A DNA stretch of 64,000 nucleotides from Haliotis cracherodii (Eukaryota), in assembly GCF_022045235.1 (NCBI RefSeq), contig NW_027266273.1:26536001-26600000 (forward strand). Direction: 5' to 3'. Within the stretch, counting starts at the first letter, position 1. Each line of letters begins with the position of its first letter. Of this stretch, positions 653 through 52,103 are shown piece by piece. Made by a program: the position numbers and the translations under genes. Under the pieces are notes generated by a model, which did no database searches, was not told the DNA's origin, and saw nothing but the letters and a program-made list of their open reading frames with translations.

Positions 653-3600
653 TTAGGCTGCAACCTGCACCATGATCCTGTTATGACAATGTCGTGTGAC
701 CCAATGGTCCGGGCTTTGGGTTCATGTCAGAACTGTCTGCTTCGTGGTGTCGGAGGCGAGGGCAGCAAGTTGAAAAAGGCAATGAAATTAGCAATTATCC
801 AATACATCACTTAGTAGAAAGGCCGACCGTTTGAAATGACTAAATACTTTTAGTTTCTATAAAAAATCAAGTACGGACTAGACAATCCAGTGAATGGCAT
901 CATGAGCAGCAATCTACACTATTCTGATACAATGACAAGAGTGTTGTATGTTTATAGTTTTTATAGTTGAGACGTATTACGCTATCTTTTGCATCTTCTT
1001 AGATTGACTGTGTGCATGTCATTATTTCCGATCGTTCTACTAGATAGATGTTATGTTGGCCATTTATCGTGCCTTGTGTTCTATTTATTCAAAATCAGAG
1101 TAGTATTATAAAGGCCAGGTTGAATTAAGTGATACAACGTATAGCAAGCCTCATCACGGGCTTTGCAATCAAGAATTATTTCACGAATTTCCACCGGAGT
1201 GCACGATTAGTGTATTTTGCCTCCCTGAAACTTGTTCAAGTCTTCTCTTTCCTTCTCACTTTAAACTCGAAACTCTTAAGACAAATTAATGTCACAAAAT
1301 GAATGAATGAACGCAAAATGGAAGTCGAAGGACCACAACACTCATTACCGAGAGTCACTGCAGCAAACATACCAAACTGAGGGGAAACAGAAACGCCACC
1401 AAATAAATAATGGTCGTCAGTTTCAACAAATTTGCCAAACAGCACGAAAACAGTTGGGACCACATGGTTGGAATGCAATTTACCTTTTCCCTGTGAACCT
1501 GTGCACGTGCTTCACGTGATTTGCGAGAAAAGTGAATTTAACCACTCAAATATGCAATCTGCACAATGTTACCCGTGTGAAATTCTGGTATAACACATGA
1601 GCTGGATTGTACTCTCTCATCACATGAAACCGTTCAAAACAACGGACATGCCTCGACTAACCGCAGAGCAGAGGGCGAGAGCCATCGGTATGTCGCAAAT
1701 GGGAGCGACGCAGGAGCACGTTGCCAGGGTCATGGGCTGCTTCTAGTGCACCATCGCCAGACTTGTCACACGTCACAGGCACACTGCCAGAGCCACAGAC
1801 AGGCCGAGGAGTCCAAGACCCAAGGTCACGACCCCACAGGAAGACCGGTATTTACGGGTGCCTCACATAAGTCCAGAATTCCCAACGGTGACGTCAACAA
1901 CCGCAAACAGCCTTTGGCATCCAGCCAGCAGAAGGACCGTTGCTAGAAGACTCCGCCTGGATGGCCTCCGTGCCTATCGACCTTTCAAGGGCATGACGTT
2001 AACGTTTCTATACCGACTTTCACAGACTGAAATGGGCCAGGACTGTACAGCAGTGGCAGCAGGGAAATTCGCGAAGAGTGCTCTTCAGGGACGAGAGTAG
2101 GTGCCGGATCTTCAAGCCTAATGGGCGAGTTTGAATCTACTGATGACGTGGTGACGTGTTGCTAAGAAGTCTAGCCTTATGGAGGTGGTAGTGTCATGGT
2201 CTGTGGTGGCATCTGCGGGAACCATAAGACTGATCTGGACATCAGAGACAGAAATCTCACTGCACGTCGTTACATTGATGAGGTTTTGCGGCCTGTTGTA
2301 CTGCCTTTCCTGCAAGGACACCCACGGACGCTGTTTCAGCAGGACAACGCCACCCCTCCAGAGCTCGAATCGCAAGCGACTTTCTGGACGCCAACAACGT
2401 GACCGTTTTACAGTGGCCAGCCAGATGACCGGTCCTGTCGCCCACAGAGCACCTCTGGGACCAACTTGGACGCAGGATTCGCAAATGTCAACAGCCGCCA
2501 TTGACGAGGGATGCCTTGGCAATCACCCTGCAGGAAGAATGGCGTGGGATACCTAATCAGGATGTCACGACCCTTGTGTACTCAGTTCGACGTCGTGTTA
2601 GGGCCTGCATCGTTGCTGGAGGGGGTCACATCCGATATTCTGTAGCACGGGACTTTAAAAGAGATCGAATACTGGACAGTGCACCCAACATGAAAACGTC
2701 TCTGCAGAACTTTAAGTACATGGTTTTTGATGTTGTCATTTTCAAATACCGTTTTTGAATAATTGTTATTTATAGTTAAACATCAACTGTTACTAAATGT
2801 TGCGTATGTTTTGTTTTAGACCAGAAATTTGTTTGGTGGCTTTTCTTATGTCCGTAAGTTTATATCACCGTAATATCTGCTTATGTCTATGTCAAGCGCC
2901 GGTCACCCCTACAGGCAACGCCAACTATATATATTACCTCAAGTGTCTCAATCTTAGCAGGGTCGTGAATGTCCATCTTCTGGGCGTCGGAAAGTGCCCA
3001 CAGGTAGCAGTGGGTCTTGGATATCATAACCATTTCACCCTGCTTAATACGAGCGGGCAATGAGACGATGTCAGCGATATTGTCCCCTTTACACGACAAT
3101 AATCGAGGGCATAATATTCTTGTCGCATAATGTATGACTTACATTATATATCATATTATTACCAATGAGTAATGTATGGACTATTATAAGTGTGTATTTT
3201 GTCGTATTCATGAGATATTATATTAATATGAAGTAGCATTCTTAAATATCAATATATCTATATGATTGATAAATCATGTATAAACGTACTTTAAGGTTTT
3301 AATAGTGTTTCCGCAATCACGTGACATGACGTTTCGTATGAGGTTACGATATCTGTGTATTCATGTTACATACACTGTCTGTAAAAGACAATATCAAAGC
3401 ATGAACATAACAGGAACGCGTTGCAACACAAACTTGCAATGTATTAATATGAACTACGTACAATGTTCTTGTCGTAGGAAAATAAAAGTGCTCCATGTGG
3501 AGGAGGTGTGGCGTGTGTGTGGACCGCGTGGGTGTGGACCGCGTGGGGGTGATGGGCGATGTGCGTGGCGTGAGGATGGTGAGTTGCTTTGGGTGCATCG

Positions 3601-4238
3601 GTTGTCTGGGCCTGAAAATATAATGCGTCACATTTACTGCAGAAAATGAAAGGATGCTTCACTATTCAAATGTATTGAAGTGAGTGAGTGGGTAGGGATT
3701 AACGCCACTTTTAACAGTATTCCAATTTTTATCACAGCGAGTCAGCTTAATGTGGGAGGAAAGCCCCGAAAGTCTCAGACATTAACCACTTTGGTGAAAC
3801 AACGAGTACGAGTACGGTGCTTACACACCATGAAACATAATCGGGATTCGAACCCATATTCATATGTTTCTGGCGAGCCCAAGGGGCGCAACAGTGCACA
3901 GCGAATTGCGGCGCCTATGTAGTTGAATAAACTGAATTAAATGGAAGAGTAACCTCTAAGAACTATGCTACATGATCCACATGGAAATACATCAGGTAAA
4001 GAGACGAAACACCGTACACCACCACTGTGACTTCCAACCGCCGTGACAGCTGGATGTAAGTCATAGTTCCCGATCGTAAGTGATCCAGAAATATTCTTAC
4101 GTTTGCAGATTAGAGTGAATGAATGGTGTTTAAAGCTTCAGTCAGCACTGCCCCAATGAAATGTATAGGAAATAACATGTGTAGGCTACTTATCTGGGCC
4201 AGATACACAACGCAGGCAATCAGCACAATCTTCAGCAT
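653..4238 (-). pseudogene. Copy A of His-rich/BRICHOS-like secreted protein family, disabled (exons 4194-4238, 3462-3611, 2938-3039, 653-775)
   Basis: Conceptual protein MLKIVLIACVVYLAQ|AQTTDAPKATHHPHATHIAHHPHAVHTHAVHTHATPPPHGALLFSYDKNI|GEMVMISKTHCYLWALSDAQKMDIHDPAKIETLE|FQLAALASDTTKQTVLT*TQSPDHWVTRHCHNRIMVQVAA*. Lesions versus copy B: intron-1 donor GT>AT (4192-4193), no AG at exon-4 acceptor, TGA at 722-724 (GGA in B), TATAAG and AATAAG instead of TATAAA and AATAAA. Confidence 0.85.
1373..2862 (+). mobile_element. Tc1-family DNA transposon, degenerate, in intron 3 of copy A
   Basis: MPRLTAEQRARAIGM from 1648, GGGSVMVCGGI, FQQDNA, RRRVRACIVAGGGHIRY. Degenerate TIRs AAACTGAGGGGAAACAGAAACGCCACCAAA / TTTGGTGGCTTTTCTTATGTCCGTAAGTTT. 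Absent from the homologous site in copy B (~10550). Confidence 0.9.
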
Positions 4239-4292
4239 GGTGAATCGTAGTAGCAGCAGCGAGAAATGAAGAAGTATCACTAAATGTGATTT

Positions 4293-4311
4293 CTTATAAG
4301 CCTTCTTATCA
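4293..4311 (-). promoter_or_regulatory. GATA site plus degenerate TATA box of copy A
   Basis: TGATAA (4306-4311), 7 nt, TATAAG (4293-4298). Confidence 0.55.
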
Positions 4312-50305: not shown

Positions 50306-50324
50306 TGATAGGGACGTGTATAAA
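50306..50324 (+). promoter_or_regulatory. GATA site plus TATA box of copy E
   Basis: TGATAG (50306-50311), 7 nt, TATAAA (50319-50324). Confidence 0.7.
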
Positions 50325-50380
50325 GAGGATCGCCAGTGCCATACTTCATCTGCTGCTACCGAATTCAGCCTGAATCCACC

Positions 50381-52103
50381 ATGTTGAAGATTGCCCTTAT
50401 TGCCTGTGTTGTCTTGCTTGCTGAGGTGAGGACTTTAAATGAGAGTGTCGTTTTCTCGGAACTGCTGTTATGAGACAATTCTACTTTGATTTCACTTTGT
50501 GTAAACATACAAGCGCCAGACCATTAGGACATACTGGTTCATTGTTTAACGTCATTTTTATTCATTTGTCGTCGTATTTATAATGCGTTCAGTGTCTTCA
50601 AGAAGATGAACGCTAATGTATATGAAACATACGTTCATGCTAATATTATTAACAAAATGACAATTCATTAGTATTCAGATAATTTCACCAGCAGATATTG
50701 ACCTTTGAAATGAAAACATGCTGATCTCAACTGACACGTGCTGCATGACATGTGCACATACACGTGATAAAGCCGACATTTTATAAAAATGTATCACATG
50801 AGTTTTCTCGGAACTGCTGTTATGAGACAATTCTATTTTGATTTCACTTTGTGGACACAAACAAGCGCCAGACCATTAGGACATAATGATTCATTGTTTA
50901 ACTTCATTTTCATCAATTTGGCGTCGTACATATATTGCGTTACAAGAAGAAAAACGTTTATGTATTCGAAACATACGTTCATGCTATTATCACTAACATA
51001 TTGACAATTCATAGGTATTCAGATAATTTCATCAGCAGATATTAACCTTTTCATTGAAAACATACTCATTAGTGTATCTTTCCTATCTCTACAGTCACTG
51101 GTTGCATGACATGTAGATGTGTACGAACGTGAACAAGCCAAACATTTTATGAAAATGCATCACCTGAGATAATGTTTTATGCTGTTTCTAGGCTCAACAC
51201 ACCCATCCACCTCACCCTACCCACGAAGTCAAGACACACGCTACCCACGACGTCCACGTTCATCCCACGCATGGTGCCCACGGTGGAAATGAGCACGGAC
51301 AATTTACCTTTGCCTATGACAAACAATCAGTAAGTACTATCACATCAATAAAGTCACACAAACGATTAATACACCTTGTCGAAGAGAAATGATTGAACAT
51401 AAAACAGGATTGATTGTTAAATTTGAATAAATCATTAAATAACTTGACGATATTCCTGACCTAATGATGCAAGTCGTTAACGCATAAACGTGTGAACCTG
51501 ACATCCATGCCCATTCCTCTGAATGCTAAATGTTTCCCACAGGGCGAAATGGTCATGATAACCCAAACTCATTGCTATCTGATGGCGCTGAGCGATGCCC
51601 AGAAGTTGGACGTCCACGACCCTGCTAAGATTGAGGCCCTTGAGGTAATTTAGATGGGTTCAGTCAGATGTCACATTATTGCTATGGTTATATGACGGAT
51701 ACAATCAAAATTATAACGCAGAAATTAGGAGAATAAATCCGAAGAAATCGGAATTGATGACCAACGTCAGTTGCAAAAACTATCCATTATGATTTGTAAA
51801 GTAATGCACATCGAGCGCATGGATATAAGATATATGATATATTGTCTGAAAGCGCCAATCAATCTTGTCGCAACATTTTGTTGCAGGTTTATTCGAGTGT
51901 AGTGATTAAAAGAAGATGAACACAAATTGTTTGGCATGTGTTCGATCATGTTGTTTACTTTTTATGTTTTTTCCTATTTTTAGCTTCAACTCGCTGCGCT
52001 AGCTTCTGACACCACAAAGCAGACCGTTCTTTCAGGAGCCGCTCCAGACCATTGGGTCAGGGCACATTGTCACGCGAGAACAATAATGATGGTTCAAAAG
52101 TAA
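50381..52103 (+). CDS. Copy E: secreted His-rich protein with BRICHOS-like domain, 134 aa (exons 50381-50425, 51192-51329, 51543-51644, 51984-52103)
   Basis: GT-AG phase-0 introns. MLKIALIACVVLLAE|AQHTHPPHPTHEVKTHATHDVHVHPTHGAHGGNEHGQFTFAYDKQS|GEMVMITQTHCYLMALSDAQKLDVHDPAKIEALE|LQLAALASDTTKQTVLSGAAPDHWVRAHCHARTIMMVQK*. TATAAA 50319-50324; AATAAA 52168-52173. Confidence 0.9.

What the first reader, a model, noticed from the sequence alone, without database searches (positions are those of the whole stretch)
653..52103. Five-copy family of secreted proteins pairing a His-rich repeat with a BRICHOS-like domain
Seen: five 4-exon genes assemble by hand with phase-0 introns. Each has a signal peptide ending A-x-A then Gln (possible pyroglutamate N-terminus), a His/Thr/Pro-rich tract (10 His in the first 28 exon-2 residues of B; 13 in 43 of D), and a ~85-aa domain F-x-Y-[DE]-x3-G-E-M-V-M-x3-T-H-C-Y-L ... 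W-[VI]-x2-H-C-H-x2-hydrophobic strand. The two Cys in this domain are invariant and 52-53 aa apart. Established: BRICHOS domains (proSP-C, Bri2, gastrokines, polychaete AMP precursors) have Y/H-D..G..C-Y-I and a helix-C-beta end with one disulfide, and they chaperone beta-prone clients. Inference: this is a divergent BRICHOS-like domain with no C-terminal client. The N-terminal His-rich tract, a likely Zn/Cu- and pH-responsive module, may be its client or effector, e.g. in mucus, gut, adhesive, biomineral or antimicrobial roles. I do not recognise this architecture as a named family.
Basis: partly seen in the sequence, partly recalled or inferred. Interest (0 to 1): 0.85.

Follow-up and report, generated by a model that had tools for sequence, protein, structure and literature searches.

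The report
Abalone His-rich secreted BRICHOS-like gene cluster
The window holds four intact genes and one broken copy of a small secreted abalone protein that joins a histidine-rich tail to a domain whose predicted fold best matches the BRICHOS anti-aggregation chaperone; the family occurs across molluscs, has no name, and its function is untested.

Summary
All five 4-exon, phase-0 copies are at the stated places. Copies B to E are intact and identical to NCBI "uncharacterized protein" models of Haliotis cracherodii. Copy A has lost two splice sites and carries a premature stop. The family is also larger than five: four more copies lie just left of the window, giving a nine-gene, 100-kb cluster.

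Relatives occur in gastropods, bivalves and a chiton. All are unnamed and have no Pfam domain. Across 41 members, one Phe and two Cys are invariant, and 36 have a His-rich tract.

The BRICHOS reading is supported by fold, not by sequence statistics:
- Two independent AlphaFold models (abalone and Littorina) each rank proSP-C BRICHOS (2YAD) first with Foldseek and with a full scan of 48,161 chains (Z 6.3-6.7, about 68 of 77 residues).
- Language-model neighbours are BRICHOS clusters.
- Pfam BRICHOS hits are recurrent but below threshold.

Paralogue dN/dS of 0.15-0.33 in the domain shows purifying selection.

I read this as a new, divergent BRICHOS-like family with no C-terminal client. The look-ups made show no earlier report of this family on other DNA.

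The parts
9317..11842 (-). Gene B, intact, 127 aa. Exons 11798-11842, 11013-11126, 10619-10720, 9317-9439.
   Evidence: GT-AG, phase-0 introns. The product is identical to NCBI model P0002 of Haliotis cracherodii.
16427..19144 (-). Gene C, intact, 122 aa from the conserved ATG. Exons 19100-19144, 18668-18766, 18135-18236, 16427-16549. It has the shortest His tract and Glu in place of the Asp.
   Evidence: NCBI model P0008 (131 aa) uses an upstream in-frame ATG.
33421..34792 (-). Gene D, intact, 143 aa. Exons 34748-34792, 34224-34385, 33893-33994, 33421-33543.
   Evidence: Equals NCBI model P0009.
34300..34358 (-). 24-nt tandem repeat (2.5 copies, 97% matches) inside exon 2 of D. It encodes the repeated T-H-D-V-K-T-H-A unit. 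E has one unit fewer.
   Evidence: Tandem Repeats Finder. D/E exon-2 alignment.
50381..52103 (+). Gene E, intact, 134 aa. Exons 50381-50425, 51192-51329, 51543-51644, 51984-52103. It is the inverted (head-to-head) duplicate of D.
   Evidence: Equals NCBI model P0010. The inverted duplication 33025-36272 versus 52509-48991 is 78-80% identical.
653..4238 (-). Copy A, decayed. Exon homologues 4194-4238, 3462-3611, 2938-3039, 653-775. Intron-1 donor is AT, there is no AG before exon 4, and codon 18 of exon 4 is TGA.
   Evidence: NCBI models it as the truncated 109-aa P0001, using alternative splice sites.
10619..11126 (-). In gene B: the His-rich tract and first strand (exon 2), and strands 2-3 with the first Cys plus helix 1 (exon 3). 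Helix 2, the second Cys and the last strand are in exon 4 (9317-9439).
   Evidence: AlphaFold2 model m945ba056a82d. Residues 1-40 have pLDDT below 50. In the domain (residues 41-127) pLDDT is about 72-94 by 10-residue block, mostly about 90.

Best explanation
The window carries part of a tandem cluster of genes for small secreted proteins (about 105-127 aa when mature).

Each protein has three parts:
- a cleavable signal peptide;
- a disordered N-terminal tract rich in His, Thr and Pro, whose length changes by repeat slippage;
- a compact C-terminal domain of about 83 aa with exactly two Cys.

The domain is most likely a very divergent member of the BRICHOS fold. [quoted passage not shown] The domain sits at the very C-terminus, so there is no C-terminal aggregation-prone client.

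The family is pan-molluscan and uncharacterized. In abalone it has expanded to nine linked genes of three types.

Inferred mechanism, not shown: the domain acts as an ATP-independent anti-aggregation (chaperone-like) module in the secretory pathway or extracellular fluid. The tethered His tract makes the protein respond to pH and/or Zn, Cu or Ni. Computed net charge switches from about -3 to -7 at pH 8.1 to about +8 to +10 at pH 5.5 in B, D and E; C, with the shortest tract, reaches only about +2. No conserved basic cleavage site separates tract and domain, so the tract probably stays attached.

My odds: real, selected secreted-protein genes, above 0.95. BRICHOS-superfamily fold or homology, about 0.7. 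Chaperone with a pH/metal-sensor function, about 0.3.
For: Gene structure and integrity:
- GT-AG, phase-0 models for B to E are identical to NCBI models.
- Domain dN/dS is 0.15-0.33 between paralogues.
- The nine-gene cluster sits on one contig only.

Family range:
- An HMM search of 1.84 billion representatives gave 43 hits at E<=1e-3. At least two of them (P0026, P0032) are low-complexity artefacts.
- Members come from Haliotis, Patella, Littorina, Gigantopelta, many bivalves and the chiton Liolophura.
- In 41 aligned members F47, C64 and C117 are invariant and each mature chain has exactly two Cys. Y65 and E87 are 95% conserved. Position 50 is Asp in 80% and Glu in 15%. A His-rich tract is present in 36 of 41.

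Fold:
- In the abalone model the domain blocks have pLDDT about 72-94, mostly about 90. The Littorina model, 25% identical, has mean pLDDT 86.6.
- Foldseek ranks 2YAD chains first for both (E 0.24, prob 0.85; E 0.05, prob up to 0.98, top five all 2YAD).
- VIA-align against 48,161 chains puts 2yad_A at rank 1 for both: Z 6.3, rmsd 2.8, 69 of 77 aligned and Z 6.5, rmsd 2.9, 67 of 77. 2yad_D scores Z 6.7.
- The aligned ranges (model 40-125 to chain 95-197) put D50, C64 and C117 in register with the positions I recall as D105, C121 and C189 of proSP-C. D105 is cited in a preprint; the two Cys numbers are from memory.
- C64 lies in a strand and C117 follows helix 2. The review PMC10182729 describes the conserved BRICHOS disulfide in the same way.

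Sequence-level hints:
- Pfam BRICHOS scores 20.6 bits (E 5e-4) in family member P0018.
- It is the only family hit by three of 41 members.
- The family HMM's best hit among 244 ORF pieces from three own-genome loci is the canonical BRICHOS exon, aligned Cys-Tyr to Cys-Tyr.
- ESM Atlas nearest named clusters are proSP-C-like and gastrokine-2 BRICHOS, for both an abalone and a clam member.

Charge switch.
Against: No score is statistically decisive.
- Foldseek E-values are above 0.01.
- Z of 6.3-6.7 is below the 7-8 that the tool says unrelated best hits often reach. An unrelated DUF1488 structure (2gpi) follows at Z 4.8-5.1.
- Atlas scores of 0.85-0.87 are "lead only" by the tool's own calibration.

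Sequence tests mostly fail.
- No abalone protein hits Pfam BRICHOS even at E<=10.
- Family profiles find no BRICHOS chain in PDB sequences.
- The Asp position is Glu in copy C and in 15% of the family. In known BRICHOS domains Asp is 97%.

Some things could not be checked.
- The Cys-Cys distance could not be measured, because model coordinates are not exposed.
- No RNA or protein evidence for the abalone genes could be obtained.
- Chaperone activity, metal binding and tissue of expression are all untested.
- At seawater pH the proteins are anionic, which argues against a classical cationic antimicrobial role.
Confidence: 0.6

Rival explanations
1. The domain is a mollusc-specific fold that only resembles BRICHOS by convergence. 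A small beta-sheet packed by two helices with one disulfide is a common arrangement. On this reading it has an unrelated function, such as ligand or metal binding through its own conserved His78, E87 and the acidic residue at position 50.
For: Every similarity score is sub-significant. DUF1488 (2gpi) scores only about 1.5 Z lower. Pfam and PDB profile searches fail. The domain itself holds 5-12 His and a conserved His78 in 83% of members.
Against: Four kinds of evidence point to the same family out of thousands: two structure aligners on two models, Pfam sub-threshold hits, a reciprocal HMM hit and language-model neighbours. The three residues that define BRICHOS (an acidic residue on strand 1 and two Cys linking sheet to helix 2) are also the most conserved positions here, and in the same order and register.
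Confidence: 0.25
2. The His-rich tract is the real effector: metal sequestration or transport, or an antimicrobial active at acid pH in the manner of histatins. The C-terminal domain is then mainly a folding or solubility carrier. This overlaps with the best explanation rather than excluding it.
For: The tract is conserved as a feature in 36 of 41 members across classes that split in the Cambrian, while its sequence and length evolve freely. H-x-H motifs are frequent, and the charge switches with pH.
Against: Some members lack His altogether: Littorina P0034, the chiton P0049, Mytilus P0027 and the abalone G type. The domain is therefore the constant part. No conserved dibasic or furin site would release the tract (alignments). 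The proteins are anionic at seawater pH.
Confidence: 0.3
3. They are structural components of a secreted material (shell matrix, radula or jaw, adhesive mucus). His-metal cross-links or pH-triggered coacervation would drive assembly.
For: His-rich secreted proteins do this in mussel byssus, squid beak and worm jaws (general knowledge). Tandem expansion is typical of secreted material genes. One relative (P0030, source label MERC, run ERR1711894) has no genome record and may come from a plankton metatranscriptome.
Against: The proteins are small, with a globular domain under purifying selection. They lack the Gly, Tyr or DOPA-type repeats of such materials. No member surfaced in searches of shell, mucus or radula papers, but supplements were not searched.
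Confidence: 0.12
4. The models are not real genes: chance ORFs or annotation artefacts.
Against: The exon structure is conserved in nine paralogues. dN/dS is well below 1. Homologues occur in three molluscan classes. Some complete coding sequences lie on contigs under 1.1 kb, which fits spliced transcripts: a Logan contig of 962 nt (P0046), a JGI contig of 1100 nt (P0014), and a Pinctada entry held only in UniRef, with no genome contig.
Confidence: 0.03

Closest known systems
proSP-C BRICHOS domain (PDB 2YAD; Pfam PF04089)
   Same: It is the best structural match for both models (Z 6.3-6.7, 67-69 of 77 residues). Both have the sheet-plus-two-helices fold, an acidic residue on strand 1, a Cys-Tyr-[Ile/Leu] strand, a second Cys just after helix 2, and a domain that ends about 8-10 residues after that Cys. 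As in proSP-C, the domain is at the very C-terminus with no C-terminal client region (review PMC10182729).
   Different: Sequence identity is about 13-15% and the Pfam threshold is not reached. The Cys spacing is 52-53; I recall a longer loop in proSP-C. proSP-C is a type II membrane protein whose client is its own transmembrane helix. These proteins have a cleavable signal peptide and a hydrophilic His-rich tract instead.
Gastrokines (secreted BRICHOS proteins of vertebrate stomach)
   Same: Both are small and secreted, with a signal peptide followed by a BRICHOS domain rather than a membrane anchor. Gastrokine-2 clusters are among the nearest language-model neighbours.
   Different: According to the review, gastrokines have a C-terminal region after the domain, and they have no His-rich tract. 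No detectable sequence similarity was found here.
BRICHOS-linked antimicrobial peptide precursors of polychaetes (arenicin, alvinellacin, nicomicin, capitellacin)
   Same: They are lophotrochozoan secreted precursors in which BRICHOS accompanies a short effector peptide (review PMC11767717).
   Different: There the peptide is C-terminal, cationic, often a beta-hairpin, and released at a cleavage site. Here nothing follows the domain, the candidate effector is N-terminal and His-rich, and no cleavage site is conserved.
OAF (out at first), recognised as BRICHOS through predicted structure
   Same: It is a precedent for a BRICHOS domain invisible to standard sequence profiles and found by fold. 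OAF clusters also appear among the Atlas neighbours. The review cites Sanchez-Pulido and Ponting 2022.
   Different: OAF is a different, larger protein conserved across animals, and it has no His-rich tract.
His-rich secreted proteins (histatins, histidine-rich glycoprotein, squid-beak and byssal His-rich domains)
   Same: Like these, the tract is disordered and has 20-37% His with H-x-H spacing, so it should titrate near pH 6-7 and could bind Zn, Cu or Ni (general knowledge; charge computed).
   Different: There is no sequence relationship. Here the tract is short (about 20-60 residues) and always tethered to a folded two-Cys domain.

Membership tests
BRICHOS (Pfam PF04089 / BRICHOS superfamily) | Match to the curated sequence profile above the gathering score (25 bits) | tested here: not met
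   Abalone exons and full proteins gave no hit at E<=10. The best hit in the family is P0018 at 20.6 bits, E 5e-4. Three of 41 members hit at E<=1, best 0.0043.
BRICHOS (Pfam PF04089 / BRICHOS superfamily) | [quoted passage not shown] | tested here: met
   This was tested on predicted structures only. The order of elements is strand-strand-strand, helix 1, strand, helix 2, strand. 2YAD ranks first with Foldseek and with VIA-align for both models. Scores are modest: Z 6.3-6.7, TM 0.57-0.63 normalised to the target.
BRICHOS (Pfam PF04089 / BRICHOS superfamily) | Two strictly conserved Cys | tested here: met
   C64 and C117 are invariant in 41 of 41 members, and they are the only Cys of the mature chain.
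BRICHOS (Pfam PF04089 / BRICHOS superfamily) | These Cys form a disulfide linking helix 2 to the central sheet | not testable with these tools
   C64 lies in strand 63-68 and C117 directly follows helix 111-116, which fits. Model coordinates are not exposed, so the distance could not be measured, and no experimental data exist.
BRICHOS (Pfam PF04089 / BRICHOS superfamily) | One conserved Asp on the first strand (97% Asp in more than 1900 domains; preprint 10.1101/2021.12.01.470723) | tested here: inconclusive
   Position 50 is Asp in 33, Glu in 6, Asn in 1 and Ser in 1 of 41 members. Copy C has Glu. Equivalence to D105 is inferred only from the aligned ranges (model 40 to chain 95).
BRICHOS (Pfam PF04089 / BRICHOS superfamily) | Proprotein architecture: a hydrophobic N-terminal segment (membrane anchor or signal peptide), a linker, BRICHOS, then a C-terminal beta-prone region | tested here: not met
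   A signal peptide and a linker (the His tract) are present. The chain ends 10 residues after the second Cys, so there is no C-terminal region. The review names proSP-C as the only known exception of this kind.
BRICHOS (Pfam PF04089 / BRICHOS superfamily) | Anti-amyloid or anti-aggregation chaperone activity | not testable with these tools
   This needs recombinant protein and aggregation assays.
DUF732 (the name UniRef gives the Pinctada member A0A194AMT9) | Match to Pfam PF05305 | tested here: not met
   P0017 was scanned as part of alignment A3, and DUF732 is not among the families hit at E<=1. I treat the UniRef label as spurious.

The most novel reading that the evidence does not exclude
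This is a previously unrecognised, pan-molluscan BRICHOS family that breaks the rule that BRICHOS accompanies an aggregation-prone segment in the same chain. On this reading it is a free, secreted extracellular chaperone whose His-rich tail works as a pH/metal switch. It could control when other secreted, aggregation-prone or coacervating proteins assemble. Unchecked scan notes report arrays of Gly/His-rich secreted proteins elsewhere in this genome, which would be candidate clients in trans.
Probability: 0.25. Interest if true: 0.75.

Novelty: new variant of a known kind. Interest (0 to 1): 0.58.

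Why it matters
BRICHOS is one of the few dedicated anti-amyloid chaperone domains and is being studied as a therapeutic scaffold. According to the 2023 review, all known families but one carry their own aggregation-prone client.

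A mollusc-wide family that keeps the fold and the three signature residues, has no client region, and always carries a titratable His-rich tail would do three things:
- extend the superfamily beyond what sequence profiles can see, as happened with OAF;
- offer a natural test of whether BRICHOS can act purely in trans;
- link chaperone activity to pH or metal, given that the conserved Asp of BRICHOS is itself reported to be pH-sensitive.

For mollusc biology it also gives a testable annotation to proteins labelled "uncharacterized" in more than 20 species, including farmed oysters, mussels, scallops and abalone.

Tried and rejected
**Searches with no result**
- Pfam on single exons and on full-length proteins found nothing for the abalone proteins.
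- PDB sequence search with family profiles found no BRICHOS. The only hits were to signal-peptide-plus-His-tag constructs, which are artefacts of the His tract.
- Pfam BRICHOS against the whole abalone assembly in six frames did not hit this cluster. It found one canonical BRICHOS exon on another contig.
- A further profile search of the 5.8-billion protein set brought only more uncharacterized mollusc proteins. It gave no BRICHOS-annotated protein that could seed a profile-profile comparison.
- Literature searches by keyword and by six accession or LOC identifiers found no description of the family. Supplements were not searched.

**Steps that could not be run**
- A true hhalign against BRICHOS, because no canonical BRICHOS alignment was obtainable from the tools and the sandbox holds no profile libraries.
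No read-level evidence for splicing or tissue is therefore available.

**Hits rejected**
- P0026 (Elysia, 2240 aa) and P0032 (bacterial SpaA repeats) are low-complexity or repeat artefacts.
- The UniRef label "DUF732" for the Pinctada member was not reproduced.

**How the spliced models were handled**
- No hand-joined sequence was sent to any search tool. The joined step was left out.
- From then on, full-length work used the public NCBI proteins, which are identical to the models.
- Exons were joined only inside local scripts, for description and dN/dS.

Full report
**What is in the window**

A six-frame motif scan finds the G-E-M-V-M, H-C-Y-L and H-C-H motifs five times: four on the minus strand and one on the plus strand. 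The 15-codon first exon was found for all five copies by tblastn and blastn inside the window.

Exact exon borders were read from the DNA. Each copy has four exons and three phase-0 introns. In B, C, D and E every intron is GT...AG.

| Copy | Strand | Length | Exons |
|---|---|---|---|
| B | - | 127 aa | 11798-11842, 11013-11126, 10619-10720, 9317-9439 |
| C | - | 122 aa | 19100-19144, 18668-18766, 18135-18236, 16427-16549 |
| D | - | 143 aa | 34748-34792, 34224-34385, 33893-33994, 33421-33543 |
| E | + | 134 aa | 50381-50425, 51192-51329, 51543-51644, 51984-52103 |

A TATA-like motif lies about 55-60 nt upstream of each ATG. This is read directly from the sequence and was not tested.

Copy A (4194-4238, 3462-3611, 2938-3039, 653-775) is decayed:
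- The donor of intron 1 reads AT.
- No AG precedes exon 4.
- Codon 18 of exon 4 is TGA, which removes the second Cys and the last strand.

**The organism, and independent gene models**

An uninterrupted reading frame containing exon 3 of B was given by reference, with the search restricted to the exon region. It retrieved Haliotis proteins.

P0002 of Haliotis cracherodii is identical over 127 aa to my model of B. P0008, P0009 and P0010 correspond to C, D and E. P0001 is a truncated 109-aa model of A that uses alternative splice sites. All are labelled "uncharacterized protein".

From here on I used these public proteins for full-length work. No hand-joined sequence was sent to any search tool, so the joined step was left out.

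**The cluster is larger than five**

A profile of the family searched against the whole assembly in six frames hits only contig C10, between 26.488 and 26.588 Mb. The tool warns that such counts are lower bounds.

Four more copies lie left of the window, all on the minus strand with the same exon plan:
- Three are of the type of H. rubra P0012. They are His-rich and carry a T-H-E-P-K-E linker. They lie at about C10:26487010-26491480, 26498468-26502424 and 26510369-26511936.
- One is of the type of P0011, with a Ser/Thr-rich tract instead of a His-rich one, at about 26529600-26530824.
- Exon 1 was not located for two of these four.

Inside the window, D and E are a head-to-head inverted duplication (33025-36272 versus 52509-48991, 78-80% identical). 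A, B and C are tandem copies. Transposon remains fill the gaps.

**Selection and tract evolution**

Between intact paralogues, dN/dS in exons 3+4 is 0.15-0.33, with dS from 0.18 (D/E) to about 1 (B/E). The domain is therefore under purifying selection.

The His tract changes mainly by insertions and deletions. D has a 24-nt unit in 2.5 copies, and E has one unit fewer.

**Family range**

An HMM of ten Haliotis sequences against 1.84 billion representatives gave 43 hits at E<=1e-3. At least two of these, P0026 and P0032, are repeat artefacts.

Look-ups place members in three classes:
- Gastropods: Haliotis, Patella, Littorina, Gigantopelta.
- Bivalves: Mya, Mercenaria, Ruditapes, Dreissena, Sinanodonta, Mytilus, Pecten, Mizuhopecten, Argopecten, Pinctada, Crassostrea/Magallana, Saccostrea, Ostrea.
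- A chiton: Liolophura.

None has a name or a precomputed Pfam domain.

Some records have no genome source or lie on contigs under 1.1 kb that hold a complete coding sequence. These include a Pinctada entry held only in UniRef, a MERC record from run ERR1711894, and Logan and JGI contigs. They fit spliced transcripts, so they are indirect evidence that relatives are expressed.

Across 41 aligned members:
- F47, C64 and C117 are invariant, and every mature chain has exactly two Cys.
- Y65 and E87 are 95% conserved, and H78 is 83% conserved.
- Position 50 is Asp in 80% and Glu in 15%.
- Thirty-six members have a His-rich tract, typically 20-37% His.
- The tract is missing in a few members, so the domain is the constant element.

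A maximum-likelihood tree shows:
- The A-to-E type and the G type form a Haliotis-only clade (support 95/84).
- The B and C lineages have orthologues in other Haliotis species.
- The F type groups with bivalve sequences (96/84).
- At least two lineages therefore predate the abalone expansion.

**Is the domain BRICHOS?**

Sequence profiles alone do not show it:
- No abalone protein hits Pfam at E<=10.
- Family profiles find no BRICHOS chain among PDB sequences.

Every other line of evidence points to the same family.

1. Abalone model. AlphaFold2 on P0002 with ten sequences gives a disordered N-terminus. In the domain (residues 41-127) pLDDT by 10-residue block is about 72-94, mostly about 90. 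The order of elements is three strands, helix 1, a strand, helix 2, a strand.
   - Foldseek against 350,542 PDB chains ranks proSP-C BRICHOS 2YAD first (E 0.24, prob 0.85, TM 0.57-0.61 on the target).
   - VIA-align against 48,161 representatives, independent of Foldseek, also ranks 2yad_A first (Z 6.3, rmsd 2.8, 69 of 77 residues). DUF1488 follows at Z 4.8 and a second BRICHOS entry at 4.5.
   - The second look gives 2yad_D Z 6.7.
2. Littorina model. A model of P0034, 25% identical, built with 46 sequences (mean pLDDT 86.6), repeats the result.
   - The five best Foldseek hits are all 2YAD (E 0.05, prob up to 0.98).
   - 2yad_A is again first of 48,161 (Z 6.5, rmsd 2.9, 67 of 77).
3. Pfam sub-threshold hits. 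BRICHOS hits family member P0018 at 20.6 bits (cut-off 25) in the Cys-Tyr strand. It is the only family hit by more than one of the 41 members (3 members, best E 0.0043).
4. Reciprocal check. The family HMM's best hit among 244 ORF pieces from three own-genome loci is the one canonical BRICHOS exon. It aligns Cys-Tyr on Cys-Tyr, but the score is weak (5.8 bits).
5. Language-model neighbours. The nearest named ESM Atlas clusters for an abalone and a clam member are proSP-C-like and gastrokine-2 BRICHOS clusters (0.85-0.86). All ten best named hits share one family or clan. The tool rates such scores as leads only.

The review PMC10182729 states the defining features of BRICHOS:
- a sheet flanked by two helices;
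- essentially three conserved residues, one Asp and two Cys;
- a disulfide that links helix 2 to the central sheet.

Here C64 lies in a strand and C117 directly follows helix 2. The aligned ranges (model 40-125 to chain 95-197) place D50, C64 and C117 in register with D105, C121 and C189. D105 is cited in the preprint read. The two Cys numbers come from my memory. The register is inferred from the range ends, not from a residue-level alignment.

I could not measure the Cys-Cys distance, because model coordinates are not exposed.

My estimate that the domain belongs to the BRICHOS superfamily is about 0.7. It is not a member of Pfam PF04089 as that model now stands.

**Architecture compared with known BRICHOS proteins**

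The review gives the usual plan: a hydrophobic N-terminal segment, a linker, BRICHOS, then a C-terminal beta-prone client. It names proSP-C as the only exception, lacking the C-terminal part.

This family also ends right after the last strand. Unlike proSP-C, it has a cleavable signal peptide rather than an aggregation-prone membrane helix. The His-rich tract occupies the linker position.

No conserved basic cleavage site separates tract and domain, so I expect the tract to stay attached.

**How it may work (inference)**

Net charge was computed with generic pKa values. In B, D and E the mature protein goes from about -3 to -7 at pH 8.1 to about +8 to +10 at pH 5.5, almost entirely because of the tract. 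C, which has the shortest tract, goes from about -6 to only about +2.

The conserved Asp of BRICHOS is reported to titrate between pH 6 and 7 and to tune chaperone activity (preprint 10.1101/2021.12.01.470723).

My preferred mechanism is a secreted, ATP-independent anti-aggregation module whose activity, self-association or partner binding is switched by pH and/or by Zn, Cu or Ni binding to the tail.

Two alternatives are listed with their odds under rival explanations: the tract as the effector (metal handling, or antimicrobial action at acid pH), and a role in a His-cross-linked secreted material. None of these was tested.

- There is therefore no read-level proof of splicing or any tissue information for the abalone genes.
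- A true profile-profile comparison with BRICHOS could not be run, because no canonical BRICHOS alignment was obtainable.
- Literature searches found no description of the family, but supplements were not searched.
- The window has no N runs.
- Nothing here touches the operators' restrictions on human-like, viral or toxin sequence.

**Verdict**

The BRICHOS-like reading is the best available and is supported by convergent but individually sub-significant evidence.

I class the family as a new variant of a known kind: a pan-molluscan, unnamed, client-less BRICHOS-like family with a His-rich tail.

Noticed in passing
G000:C10:26487010-26530824 (left of the window; loci L001-L005): Four further family genes lie here on the minus strand. 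Three are of the P0012 type (His-rich, T-H-E-P-K-E linker) and one is of the P0011 type (Ser/Thr-rich tract). The cluster therefore has nine genes of three types.
   Followed up: partly
window 4386-5005: A 19-nt minisatellite (32.6 copies, 91% matches) lies just upstream of exon 1 of copy A. It is open in all three minus-strand frames and spells a pseudo His/Thr/Pro-rich repeat. It is probably non-coding. A degenerate relative lies upstream of B at about 12000-12870.
   Followed up: partly
window 10004-10175: A 54-nt tandem repeat (3.2 copies, 94% matches) lies inside intron 3 of gene B.
   Followed up: no
window 21717-24884 (-): Remains of a LINE-type retrotransposon: reading frames with reverse transcriptase (RVT_1, E 9e-21) and endonuclease (Exo_endo_phos_2, E 4e-12) domains.
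   Followed up: partly
window 40918-41870 (-): A Tc1/mariner-like DNA transposon remnant: a DDE_3 endonuclease domain (E 8e-10) preceded by helix-turn-helix matches.
   Followed up: partly
window 42674-45914 versus 54488-56723 and 62272-63045: Dispersed repeats of 0.8-1.4 kb at 73-78% identity. One copy overlaps the start of the "micro-exon gene" that another first-stage note places at 55566-59064, so part of that finding may lie in repeated DNA.
   Followed up: no
proteins P0040, P0045, P0050 (Mytilus edulis and M. trossulus): Three gene models join cadherin repeats to a complete C-terminal domain of this family. The junction resembles the mature N-terminus of a separate family gene, so these may be merged neighbouring genes rather than true fusions.
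   Followed up: partly
L007 (G000:C67:59601151-59601255, -): This is the only place in the abalone assembly that reaches the Pfam BRICHOS cut-off in six-frame search (25.2 bits). It is an exon with a Bri/ITM2-like C-Y-V-M-K-L strand, presumably a canonical BRICHOS gene.
   Followed up: partly
protein P0018 (257 aa, source not looked up): This family member has the N-terminal half of the protein repeated about 2.5 times. It could be an assembly or annotation duplication, or a real multi-domain form. It gave the strongest Pfam BRICHOS score.
   Followed up: no
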